DNA of 63,206 nucleotides, filler included, from Octopus bimaculoides (lineage: Eukaryota): NCBI RefSeq assembly GCF_001194135.2. It is 6 parts of 6 records of this genome, joined end to end, with 100 filler letters (N's around TTAATTAATTAA, not from the genome) between each part and the next. Parts side by side here need not be neighbours in the genome. Positions count along the whole stretch, not along the records: positions 11,768 to 41,115 come from NC_068992.1; 5 more parts are not named here. One strand, written 5' to 3'. The notes under the pieces were generated by a model. It made no database searches. It was not told the origin of the DNA and saw only the letters and a program-made list of their open reading frames with translations. The position numbers and the translations under genes are program-made. Positions 34,377 through 36,008 of the stretch are shown here, piece by piece; the first letter of the stretch is position 1; every line of letters begins with the position of its first letter.

Positions 34377-34527
34377 TAGATAGATAGATACAGATCCACA
34401 TATATAGGGGGTTCCTATAAGGTTGTTATCCACCCCTGATTGGAACTCTCCCGTATGACATGTACGCATGCTCAGTGACTTGCTTTAACTTCCGCAGACG
34501 ACTCACATACTGTACTAACCGGTTAAT

Positions 34528-34806
34528 ATGTTTCCAAAGAAATCACGCAAATACTGCTGTATATGCAGCCACTATAGAGGGAAGAATGTAGACGGCAAAG
34601 TTATTTCCCTACACAGATATCCTGCAAATGTAGCTATTCGTCATATTTGGCTTCAGAGATCGAGACTTGTGAGGAAAGACTTTGTTTACACTGCAAATAG
34701 CCAAATGTGTTCCCAGCATTTCGTCAATTGTAATGAACCATCGAAAGATCACCCCTTGCCATCCGTTTTTCCAAACAAAGTATTAAAAATATCAGTAAGT
34801 GCATGA
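34528..34806 (+). CDS. THAP (C2CH zinc-finger) domain ORF, 92 aa, probably the first exon of a transposase
   Basis: C-x2-C (CCIC), LHRYP, conserved W (IWL), MCSQHF, terminal PSVFP box. Consensus donor TCA/GTAAGT at 34795. Confidence 0.85.
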   Translation: MFPKKSRKYCCICSHYRGKNVDGKVISLHRYPANVAIRHIWLQRSRLVRKDFVYTANSQMCSQHFVNCNEPSKDHPLPSVFPNKVLKISVSA

Positions 34807-35525
34807 TCATATACGCAGTTAGTAGATGAGTGAAATGTCTCTTTGATTTATCTCCTCATTAACAGATTAGAACATGTTAAAATTCAAGAGAGAAACAAAT
34901 TCAGGTGGTGTACGCCGGGCTAAACACGAATGTTTAATCTAATAATTGTTGTGTTGATGTACAGGTATTTTTAATAAAGAATTTTGCATTCAAATAATAA
35001 ATACATTGAAATTGTTGTTAATGTCCTGAATGAATGTGGGAATTTCGAGTAAGCCTAGCTATGATATTTTTCTTTATATACATATATATATATTTATTAA
35101 TAAGNNNNNNNNNNNNNNNNNNNNNNNNNNNNNNNNNNNNNNNNNNNNNNNNNNNNNNNNNNNNNNNNNNNNNNNNNNNNNNNNNNNNNNNNNNNNNNNN
35201 NNNNNNNNNNNNNNNNNNNNNNNNNNNNNNNNNNNNNNNNNNNNNNNNNNNNNNNNNNNNNNNNNNNNNNNNNNNNNNNNNNNNNNNNNNNNNNNNNNNN
35301 NNNNNNNNNNNNNNNNNNNNNNNNNNNNNNNNNNNNNNNNNNNNNNNNNNNNNNNNNNNNNNNNNNNNNNNNNNNNNNNNNNNNNNNNNNNNNNNNNNNN
35401 NNNNNNTTGATTAAATAATAAATTTACAGCATTGAATCTAATATTCCTCTAATTATTAGACTTTATAGTGTGACTGTCCCTTCCTCTTCTACACATCATG
35501 CTCATGGCCAAATCAGTGAATGGTT

Positions 35526-35570
35526 GCTGAAAGCTATGCTGAAAGCTATGCTGAAAGCTATGCTGAAAGC
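35526..35570. repeat. 12-bp tandem repeat GCTGAAAGCTAT, 3.75 copies
   Basis: Direct. Confidence 0.9.
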
Positions 35571-35599
35571 AGATTGGGATCAGGCAATACTTCTGCTTA

Positions 35600-35789
35600 T
35601 TCCTGTCTGAAATATCGTCCGATGAATTTACTTTGTTGACATATCGACAGAATAGTTATACCTTTCAACCTTTCAATCAAGTCCGCCTTTCTTCCAGTAA
35701 CATACTGTCCATATAATCTTAAATATTTCTTTTAACTCAGGCACAGTAAGTATTTCGATAGCTGAATAATCGAATTGCTTTATATCCAT
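35600..35789 (-). pseudogene. SAP-domain ORF start with a 1-nt frameshift
   Basis: ATG at 35789: MDIKQFDYSAIEILTVPELK, then after removing one A KYLRLYGQYVTGRKADLIERLKG, matching the SAP pattern LTV.ELK..L...G....G.KADLIERL. Confidence 0.75.
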
Positions 35790-36008
35790 GATAAGACGTA
35801 AAACAATAACAATAGCGTAGATAGTCTGCGGAAGTTTAATTGTCTACATGGAGCGCCGTCTAGCCAAGGGAGATAACCTACTTATAGGAAAGCCCTATAT
35901 ATGTGTGTGTGTGTGTACACTCACACACACACACACACAAACATATTAAATATGACTACGGTGTTGTAACACCATAGTCATATTTAGTAACAATTATAGT
36001 TTTCCTTT

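What the first reader, a model, noticed from the sequence alone, without database searches (positions are those of the whole stretch)
34406..35896. TIR element with an intact THAP ORF facing a frameshifted SAP ORF (ISL2EU-like derivative)
Seen: 16-bp TIRs (14/16) in AT/TA-repeat flanks; a plus-strand 92-aa THAP ORF with all C2CH ligands, ending at a consensus donor (34795) with an acceptor 71 nt later; a minus-strand SAP-domain start at 35789 broken by one extra A; a 302-N gap inside. Established: ISL2EU-type elements encode a THAP-HTH-DDE transposase plus a second gene with a YqaJ-like exonuclease and duplicate AT; P elements make 8-bp TSDs and Kolobok duplicates TTAA, neither seen here. Inference: an internal deletion kept only the two DNA-binding modules. 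The intact THAP could act as a transposition repressor (as KP does for P elements) or as raw material for a new THAP factor.
Basis: partly seen in the sequence, partly recalled or inferred. Interest (0 to 1): 0.75.

Follow-up and report, generated by a model that had tools for sequence, protein, structure and literature searches.

The report
Decayed ISL2EU transposon copy in octopus
This is a worn-out copy, probably internally deleted, of a known kind of cut-and-paste transposon (ISL2EU) in an octopus-like genome; it keeps only the two ends and the first coding piece of each of its two genes, so it is ordinary repeat DNA rather than a new gene.

Summary
16-nt inverted ends (14/16) lie at 34406-34421 and 35881-35896. 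A 92-codon THAP reading frame starts at 34528 (Pfam 30.3 bits). A SAP reading frame starts at 35789 on the minus strand and is broken by one extra base (32.7 bits once read through). The ISL2EU assignment is confirmed. An intact 4.56-kb element in the mussel Sinanodonta woodiana (L004) has homologous ends, a THAP-HTH_Tnp_4-DDE_Tnp_4 transposase (507 aa) and a convergent SAP-SWIM-YqaJ gene (565 aa). Both window arms line up with it. The THAP frame is simply exon 1 of the transposase (89 codons) plus three codons read into the intron after a conserved GTAAGT donor.

- The SAP gene remnant has at least three frame breaks, a stop and a 12-nt tandem expansion, not one lesion.
- The proposed acceptor adds only four codons.
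- The deletion junction is not visible. Both arms stay colinear with a full-length element up to the gap, so "internal deletion" rests only on the 302-N estimate. Reads were not available.
- Three of the four window-specific THAP substitutions hit residues invariant in all relatives, and three other octopus copies are damaged. Nothing supports a selected repressor.

Verdict: an ordinary member of a known family, of low interest.

The parts
34404..34405 (.). Left candidate target-site duplication, AT. If the element instead starts at GGG, the duplication would be TA at 34405-34406.
   Evidence: The same TATA|GGG...CCC|TATA pattern flanks the intact mussel copy L004. No empty site was available, so this is unproven.
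34406..34430 (+). Left terminal inverted repeat. The core is 16 nt, AGGGGGTTCCTATAAG, and similarity to the right end extends to about 25 nt.
   Evidence: It is homologous to the mussel end AGGGCATTCCAATAAGGTTGTTGTC.
34433..34499 (+). Conserved left subterminal, promoter-like block. It holds CCCCTGATTGGAACTCTCC (34433-34451), ACGCATGC (34464-34471; GCGCATGCG in relatives, NRF1-like) and TTTAACTTCCGCAGAC (34484-34499, ETS-like).
   Evidence: The alignment of five left ends from octopus, mussel and two unidentified sources has 38 invariant columns. Reading these as a promoter is inference.
34528..34794 (+). Transposase exon 1: the THAP zinc-finger domain, 89 codons.
   Evidence: Pfam THAP 30.3 bits. 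It is 71% identical to the mussel THAP exon. The exon ends at the same ...K-x-S|GTNAGT position at which the spliced models P0015 and P0043 join exon 2.
34795..35104 (+). Conserved GTAAGT donor (34795-34800), then AT-rich sequence (29% GC) that cannot be aligned to any relative. It is presumably intron 1. The ORF stop is at 34804-34806. The stretch ends in TA-rich simple sequence at the gap.
   Evidence: An apparent match to mussel exon 2 is not significant (p about 0.09).
35105..35406 (.). Assembly gap (302 N). It hides either the deletion junction or the missing interior.
   Evidence: Reads were not available.
35407..35789 (-). Decayed 5' part of gene 2 (SAP-SWIM-YqaJ protein). It has the ATG at 35789, the SAP domain at about 35663-35750, one extra base in the T-run 35730-35733, a frame break near 35642 shared with octopus protein P0007, a further frame break near 35590, and an in-frame TAG.
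   Evidence: Pfam SAP 32.7 bits after read-through. tblastn of P0009, P0013 and the L002 ORF places successive segments in three different frames. P0007 has the same out-of-frame tail ILSICQQSKFIGRYFRQE.
35525..35570 (.). 12-nt tandem repeat TGCTGAAAGCTA, 3.8 copies, inside the gene 2 remnant.
35824..35872 (-). Conserved right subterminal block. It holds the inverted copy of the ACTTCCGC motif (35824-35839) and CCCTTGGCTAGACGGCGCTCC (reverse complement of 35850-35872).
   Evidence: Alignment with the right ends of both mussel copies.
35872..35896 (-). Right terminal inverted repeat, core 35881-35896.
35897..35898 (.). Right candidate target-site duplication, AT.

Best explanation
The stretch 34406-35896 is one insertion of an ISL2EU-group DNA transposon (PIF/Harbinger-ISL2EU-Spy superfamily). 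The host genome is probably Octopus bimaculoides or a close relative.

An autonomous element of this family is about 4.5 kb long. It carries two convergent genes, each starting just inside one end: a THAP-HTH-DDE transposase and a SAP-SWIM-YqaJ protein.

The window copy keeps both ends, both conserved subterminal promoter-like regions, transposase exon 1 (THAP) with part of intron 1, and roughly the first 90-130 codons of gene 2 (SAP plus linker), which are badly decayed. Everything catalytic is absent from the read sequence. Most likely it was lost by an internal deletion whose junction lies in the unread, TA-rich gap.

The copy cannot move by itself. Because it keeps both ends, it could in principle be moved by a transposase supplied from an autonomous copy. 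It belongs to a sublineage that spread after gene 2 was already frameshifted.

The 92-aa THAP frame is open because the copy is only a few percent diverged from its family consensus, not because it is under selection.

Shown: family identity, homology of the ends and first exons, and the lesions. Inferred: the deletion, mobilisation in trans, and the promoter role of the subterminal motifs.
For: **Domains.** The Pfam THAP and SAP hits are above their cut-offs.

**Colinearity with the mussel elements.** The left arm 34406-34800 aligns colinearly at 68-70% over about 400 nt with mussel elements L001 and L004. The right arm aligns over 76 nt of the end plus the SAP region.

**Intact relative.** L004 spans 5883-10446. 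It encodes P0015 (507 aa: THAP, HTH_Tnp_4, DDE_Tnp_4) and, convergently, P0040 (565 aa: SAP 25 bits, SWIM 17.5 bits, YqaJ 67 bits). L001 shows the same layout in decayed form.

**Family definition.** This architecture, the roughly 4.8-kb size, ends beginning GG and an AT duplication are the published definition of ISL2EU (PMC4482050; PMC4122938).

**Intron position.** The intron after the THAP exon is conserved.

**Constraint at family level.** Octopus and mussel THAP exons give dN 0.20 with only 43% identity at third codon positions, so synonymous sites are saturated. The non-coding ends are 59-62% identical, which indicates constraint on the ends.

**Sublineage.** The window and P0007 share a derived frameshift in gene 2.

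**Single insertion.** The flanks join into one compound (CA)(TA)n(TG)n microsatellite.

**Gap size.** All seven gaps in the piece abut simple repeats, and this gap's left edge is TA-rich.

**No selection on this copy.** Three of the four window-specific THAP substitutions fall on columns invariant in seven relatives.
Against: The deletion junction is not observed, and the gap length is only an assembler's estimate.

No DNA of other octopus copies could be obtained. Copy number, the structure of sister copies and the true target-site duplication are therefore untested.

No long THAP-DDE or SAP-YqaJ protein from an octopus appeared in my searches. An autonomous partner in the same genome is thus not shown. 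Octopus models that join SAP to the SWIM region (P0012-P0014) do indicate that longer copies exist.

The base next to the duplication differs from the published A|AT|T pattern: here it is T-AT-[AGGG...CCCT]-AT-A.
Confidence: 0.75

Rival explanations
1. It is a full-length (about 4.5-5 kb) decayed ISL2EU copy. Its interior (HTH, DDE, YqaJ, SWIM) lies in a gap whose size was underestimated. No internal deletion happened.
For: Both arms remain colinear with a full-length element up to the gap, and no junction is seen. Interiors of multi-copy repeats often fail to assemble. Octopus gene models that join SAP to SWIM show that longer copies exist in the genome.
Against: The gap estimate is 302 nt. 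All gaps in this piece sit in simple repeats, and this one starts in TA-rich simple sequence, as expected for a short unresolved microsatellite. The contigs run 700 and 490 nt into the element without breaking, so the repeat itself did not stop the assembler.
Confidence: 0.18
2. The THAP-only frame is a functional product: a KP-like repressor of ISL2EU transposition, or a newly recruited THAP factor kept open by selection.
For: The C2CH ligands and the canonical P, W, F and P residues are intact. The frame sits behind a conserved promoter-like region. Several octopus gene models consist of this exon alone.
Against: The window copy has G70E, F86L and R40H at positions invariant in all seven relatives.

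Other octopus copies are damaged. P0002 has Cys-to-Tyr at the third ligand, P0004 lacks the first two Cys, and P0001 has an N-terminal deletion and F65S.

Only four amino-acid changes separate this copy from the family consensus, so an open 89-codon frame is expected by chance.

The frame ends by read-through into an intron. The partner gene in the same copy is decaying. No dimerisation module is present. Expression could not be tested.
Confidence: 0.04
3. It is a scaffolding chimera. The left end of one partial copy and the right end of another were joined across the gap.
For: The gap lies inside a repeated element, and continuity could not be tested.
Against: The orientation of the two arms is exactly that of one element. 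Both flanks carry the same TATA-type junction and together rebuild one compound microsatellite, CACA(TA)nTGTG. The two arms are similarly diverged from their closest octopus relatives (92-93%).
Confidence: 0.03

Closest known systems
ISL2EU group of the PHIS (PIF/Harbinger-ISL2EU-Spy) superfamily of DNA transposons (Repbase families such as ISL2EU-n_CGi of the oyster; Han et al. 2015, PMC4482050)
   Same: The transposase has an N-terminal THAP domain, then HTH_Tnp_4 and DDE_Tnp_4. A second gene carries a YqaJ exonuclease domain. Short inverted ends contain GG(G), insertion is into AT-rich sequence with flanks compatible with a 2-bp AT duplication, the autonomous size is about 4.5-4.8 kb, and hosts are animals only.
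   Different: The window copy lacks, in the read sequence, every catalytic part. The element starts AGGG rather than GG directly after the AT. The base outside the duplication is T...A rather than the published A...T. [quoted passage not shown]
Non-autonomous internal-deletion derivatives of two-gene PIF/Harbinger-type elements, such as mPing from Ping in rice (from my own knowledge)
   Same: Both ends are kept and the interior is lost. Movement is possible only with proteins supplied by an autonomous copy. The defective lineage amplified: the gene 2 frameshift is shared with P0007.
   Different: At about 1.5 kb it is larger than a typical MITE. The first exons of both genes are retained. Copy number is unknown.
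KP element of Drosophila (P-element internal deletion encoding a THAP-containing repressor; from my own knowledge)
   Same: It would be an internally deleted element whose remaining frame encodes the THAP DNA-binding domain of its own transposase.
   Different: KP keeps a dimerisation region and is a defined in-frame product with shown repressor activity. Here the frame ends by intron read-through, has no dimerisation module, carries substitutions at invariant sites and has no expression data.

Membership tests
ISL2EU (PHIS superfamily) | Transposase with THAP + HTH + DDE (DDE_Tnp_4 type) | tested here: met
   The window holds only the THAP exon (Pfam 30.3 bits). That exon and its upstream end align colinearly with mussel elements. 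The mussel transposase P0015 has THAP, HTH_Tnp_4 and DDE_Tnp_4. The feature is met for the family. This copy has only the first exon.
ISL2EU (PHIS superfamily) | [quoted passage not shown] | tested here: met
   P0040 of the intact mussel copy has SAP 25 bits and YqaJ 67 bits, and lies convergent to the transposase. The window retains the homologous SAP start of this gene, but no YqaJ in the read sequence.
ISL2EU (PHIS superfamily) | 2-bp target-site duplication AT (target A|AT|T) | tested here: inconclusive
   The flanks are AT|AGGG...CCCT|AT in the window and in L004, and AT|TGGG...CCCT|AT in L001. TA with an element starting at GGG fits two of the three copies equally well. The outer bases are T...A, not A...T. 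No empty site was available.
ISL2EU (PHIS superfamily) | Inverted ends of 6-259 bp that usually begin with GG | tested here: met
   The ends are 16-25 nt, (A)GGGGGTTCC... and (A)GGGCTTTCC..., and are conserved with the mussel (A)GGGCATTCC....
ISL2EU (PHIS superfamily) | The DDE domain falls in the ISL2EU clade in a phylogeny with reference PIF/Harbinger, Spy and IS5 transposases | not tested
   No reference Repbase sequences were on hand. The assignment rests on the diagnostic domain combination and gene layout.
KP-like transposon-encoded repressor | A stable truncated protein with the DNA-binding domain plus a dimerisation region, expressed, that binds the element's ends and lowers transposition | not testable with these tools
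   Only the DNA-binding domain is present. There is no dimerisation module and no expression data. Substitutions at invariant sites and damaged sister copies argue against selection.

The most novel reading that the evidence does not exclude
The many first-exon-only copies of this family in octopus (THAP-only and SAP-only frames behind conserved NRF1/ETS-like subterminal promoters) might be expressed. Together they could act as dominant-negative regulators, titrating the binding sites at ISL2EU ends as KP does for P elements. That would be a KP-like self-regulation system in a two-gene PIF/Harbinger-type transposon of molluscs.
Probability: 0.05. Interest if true: 0.5.

Novelty: new member of a known kind. 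Interest (0 to 1): 0.2.

Why it matters
Its main value is for annotation.
- It shows that at least eleven short 'THAP-type' and 'SAP domain-containing' proteins in the Octopus bimaculoides proteome (63-109 aa) are first-exon fragments of ISL2EU transposons rather than host genes. This matters for counts of DNA-binding gene families in cephalopods.
- It documents that ISL2EU ends and about 100 nt of subterminal sequence are conserved between a cephalopod and a bivalve although synonymous sites are saturated. That marks those sequences as candidate transposase-binding and promoter sites.
- It shows that gene 2 of the family carries SAP and SWIM modules ahead of YqaJ.

None of this changes what is known about how such elements work.

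Tried and rejected

**Fetching DNA of other octopus copies.** Exact-protein look-ups of the window THAP frame and of P0013, P0007 and P0001 found nothing on record. I therefore have no dN/dS among octopus copies, no sister-copy structure and no empty site.

**Looking for a full-length octopus partner.**
- The THAP search returned only short octopus models.
- The search with a mussel DDE+YqaJ pseudo-protein gave 921 hits, but the 120 listed that carry an organism name are bivalves or gastropods apart from one bacterial-labelled record, and the rest are unnamed contigs.
- The exhaustive representative search gave no long protein above 70% identity.

**Exon 2 remnant.** tblastn extended the mussel P0015 alignment into 34819-34893. 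A shuffle test gave p about 0.09, and two other family members showed no match, so I rejected it.

**Second copy in the piece.** An inverted 21-nt match between 34613-34633 and about 37540 was not backed by blastn or tblastn, so it is chance.

**Recent horizontal transfer between octopus and mussel.** Third-codon-position identity is 43% and dS is saturated, so I rejected it.

**RNA genes.** Rfam and ARAGORN found nothing in the piece.

**P-element or Kolobok affiliation.** There is no 8-bp or TTAA duplication, and the relatives carry a DDE_Tnp_4-type, not a P-type or Kolobok-type, transposase.

Full report
**1. What is in the sequence**

AGGGGGTTCCTATAAG lies at 34406-34421, and its imperfect inverted partner (14/16) lies at 35881-35896. 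With indels the similarity continues to about 25 nt.

A second inverted 16-mer, TTTAACTTCCGCAGAC, lies about 80 nt inside each end at 34484-34499 and 35824-35839. It matches 15/16, with 0.18 expected by chance.

On its own a 14/16 inverted pair is not unusual in this repeat-rich piece. A census found at least 14 such loci at 500-3000 nt spacing, mostly SINE-like repeats. The ends are validated by homology, as described in section 2.

The plus-strand frame 34528-34806 (92 aa) scores 30.3 bits against Pfam THAP (cut-off 23.9). The minus-strand frame from 35789 scores 32.7 bits against Pfam SAP (cut-off 23.9) once one surplus base in the run 35730-35733 is removed.

The flanks read AT|AGGG...CCCT|AT inside a compound (CA)(TA)n(TG)n microsatellite.

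**2. What it is**

Protein searches place the host in or near Octopus bimaculoides. The closest THAP and SAP relatives (81-93% and 69-92% identity) are short UniProt models of that species.

The decisive relative is in the freshwater mussel Sinanodonta woodiana. Locus L004 holds an intact element at 5883-10446 (4,564 nt). Its ends, AGGGCATTCCAATAAG..., and its subterminal sequences align with both window ends. It carries two convergent genes:
- P0015, 507 aa, with THAP, HTH_Tnp_4 and DDE_Tnp_4.
- P0040, 565 aa, with SAP (25 bits), SWIM (17.5 bits, just under its cut-off) and YqaJ (67 bits).

A second, decayed mussel copy (L001) has the same layout.

The window's left arm 34406-34800 aligns colinearly with these elements at 68-70% over about 400 nt. 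The right arm aligns over its end and the SAP start.

This gene content, size, GG-type ends and AT-rich target are the published definition of the ISL2EU group (PMC4482050; PMC4122938). A pseudo-protein search shows the family is widespread in bivalves and gastropods, with 921 hits.

**3. The THAP frame is exon 1**

In every relative the THAP coding block ends ...FPNKVF-K/Q-T/I-S and is followed by GTNAGT. The spliced models P0015 and P0043 join exon 2 exactly there. The unspliced models read 'SVS...' into the intron.

In the window, exon 1 is 34528-34794 (89 codons). GTAAGT lies at 34795, and the frame stops three codons later.

Nothing in 34795-35104 resembles exon 2 of any relative. One weak match failed a shuffle test with p about 0.09.

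**4. The SAP side is more broken than reported**

Intact octopus models read MDIKQLDDSAIEVLTVPELKKYLRLYGQYVTGRKADLTERLKGIKILSMKNVNKVNS...RNKQKLISPLGEVLPDLK. This matches the N-terminus and linker of mussel P0040 and of the L002 ORF.

In the window these segments lie in three different frames. The lesions are:
- the extra base at 35730-35733;
- a second shift near 35642;
- a third shift near 35590;
- an in-frame TAG;
- a 12-nt tandem expansion at 35525-35570.

The second shift is shared with the octopus model P0007, which has the same out-of-frame tail ILSICQQSKFIGRYFRQE and the same stop. The window copy therefore descends from a lineage that multiplied after gene 2 was already broken.

**5. 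The gap**

I could not test continuity with reads. I could not obtain any other octopus copy as DNA either.

The sequence does support three points.
- The two arms have the orientation and end structure of a single element, and their outer flanks rebuild one microsatellite. A chimeric join is therefore unlikely.
- Both arms remain colinear with a full-length element as far as they can be aligned. No deletion junction is visible, so all of the roughly 3 kb that is missing relative to an autonomous element must fall within the N run.
- All seven gaps in this piece abut simple repeats, and this one begins in TA-rich simple sequence. That is the signature of a short unresolved microsatellite rather than a collapsed 3-kb interior.

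I therefore accept the internal-deletion reading at roughly 75-80%, with a full-length decayed copy as the main rival.

**6. Is the THAP frame kept by selection?**

At family level it is. Octopus against mussel gives dN 0.20, with third-position identity of only 43%, so synonymous sites are saturated. That reflects autonomous lineages.

For this copy, four residues differ from the octopus consensus. Three of them (R40H, G70E, F86L) fall on columns invariant in all seven relatives.

The other three known octopus copies are damaged:
- one has lost a Cys ligand;
- one has lost the first two Cys;
- one has an N-terminal deletion plus F65S.

With so little divergence, an open 89-codon frame is expected by chance. 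It is not strictly excluded either, because the zinc ligands and the canonical residues survive.

**7. How it most likely works**

Shown:
- Both ends and about 100 nt of subterminal sequence on each side are conserved between cephalopod and bivalve. They are 59-62% identical against 43% at synonymous sites.
- The conserved blocks include CCCCTRATTKGAACTCT, a GCGCATGCG-type palindrome and ACTTCCGC upstream of the THAP ATG.
- They also include CCCTTRGMTAG..GGCGCT and ACTTCCG upstream of the SAP ATG.

Inferred:
- These blocks hold the transposase-binding sites and the two outward-in promoters.
- The window copy, which keeps them, could still be excised and reinserted by proteins from an autonomous copy, but it makes no catalytic protein itself.
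- Its own transcripts, if any, would encode a 92-aa THAP peptide and no SAP product.

**8. Comparison and verdict**

This is a non-autonomous, decaying member of a known transposon group.

I found no open-access paper that mentions ISL2EU together with octopus, so the octopus family may be undescribed in the literature. It is not a new kind of element. Interest is low.

The useful by-products are the re-interpretation of a set of octopus 'THAP' and 'SAP' gene models as transposon fragments, and the map of conserved subterminal blocks.

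Noticed in passing
window 21615-21959, 22853-23785, 30409-30783, 31490-31642, 33848-33877, 35105-35406, 39004-39013: Every assembly gap in the piece abuts a simple repeat: (TA)n, (TC)n, poly-A/poly-T, (AGG)n, poly-C, and (ATT)n/(CA)n. The gaps look like unresolved microsatellites.
   Followed up: yes
window 35944-35989: A 46-nt near-perfect hairpin, TATTAAATATGACTACGGTGTT / AACACCATAGTCATATTTAGTA (91% complementary, 2-nt loop), lies just outside the right end of the element. 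Its nature is unknown.
   Followed up: no
window 34332-34376, 36009-36095, 36942-37061: Long microsatellites surround the insertion: (AGAC)11 to the left, and (ATAG)22, (AC)12 and (TG)46 to the right. The element itself sits in a (CA)(TA)n(TG)n tract.
   Followed up: partly
L004 10447-10457 and L001 14217-14226: The two mussel copies share 11 nt beyond the right end (GCCC-TATA-[A/G]-CCTATA). This partly repeats the terminal CCTATA. It could be a footprint, a target preference or a slightly longer right end. It is unexplained.
   Followed up: no
L002 446-3490 (JGI metagenome contig): A 3-kb derivative from an unidentified organism keeps THAP, the acidic region and HTH (transposase residues 1-318). 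It then carries SAP to SWIM (gene 2 residues 3-185) on the same strand. It has no DDE and no YqaJ: a rearranged copy that retains only the DNA-binding modules.
   Followed up: partly
P0001, P0002, P0004, P0007-P0014 (Octopus bimaculoides UniProt entries): At least eleven short 'THAP-type' or 'SAP domain-containing' protein models (63-109 aa) are first-exon fragments of this transposon family. Some are fused to translated 5'-UTR or spliced around lesions. They inflate host gene counts.
   Followed up: partly
window 25381-25665, 27435-27450, 28322-28375, 39470-39820, 40329-40362: Several copies, in both orientations, of a short repeat containing GGAATTTGAACTCAGA (like a tRNA B box). They are probably a tRNA-derived SINE family. 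A similar motif lies next to the poly-C gap at 33878-33900. ARAGORN and Rfam report nothing.
   Followed up: no
window 34464-34499 and 35824-35839; L004 5950-5985: The conserved subterminal motifs resemble binding sites of the housekeeping factors NRF1 (GCGCATGCG) and ETS/GABP (ACTTCCG). They sit upstream of both element genes in octopus, mussel and L003. A promoter role is inferred, not tested.
   Followed up: partly
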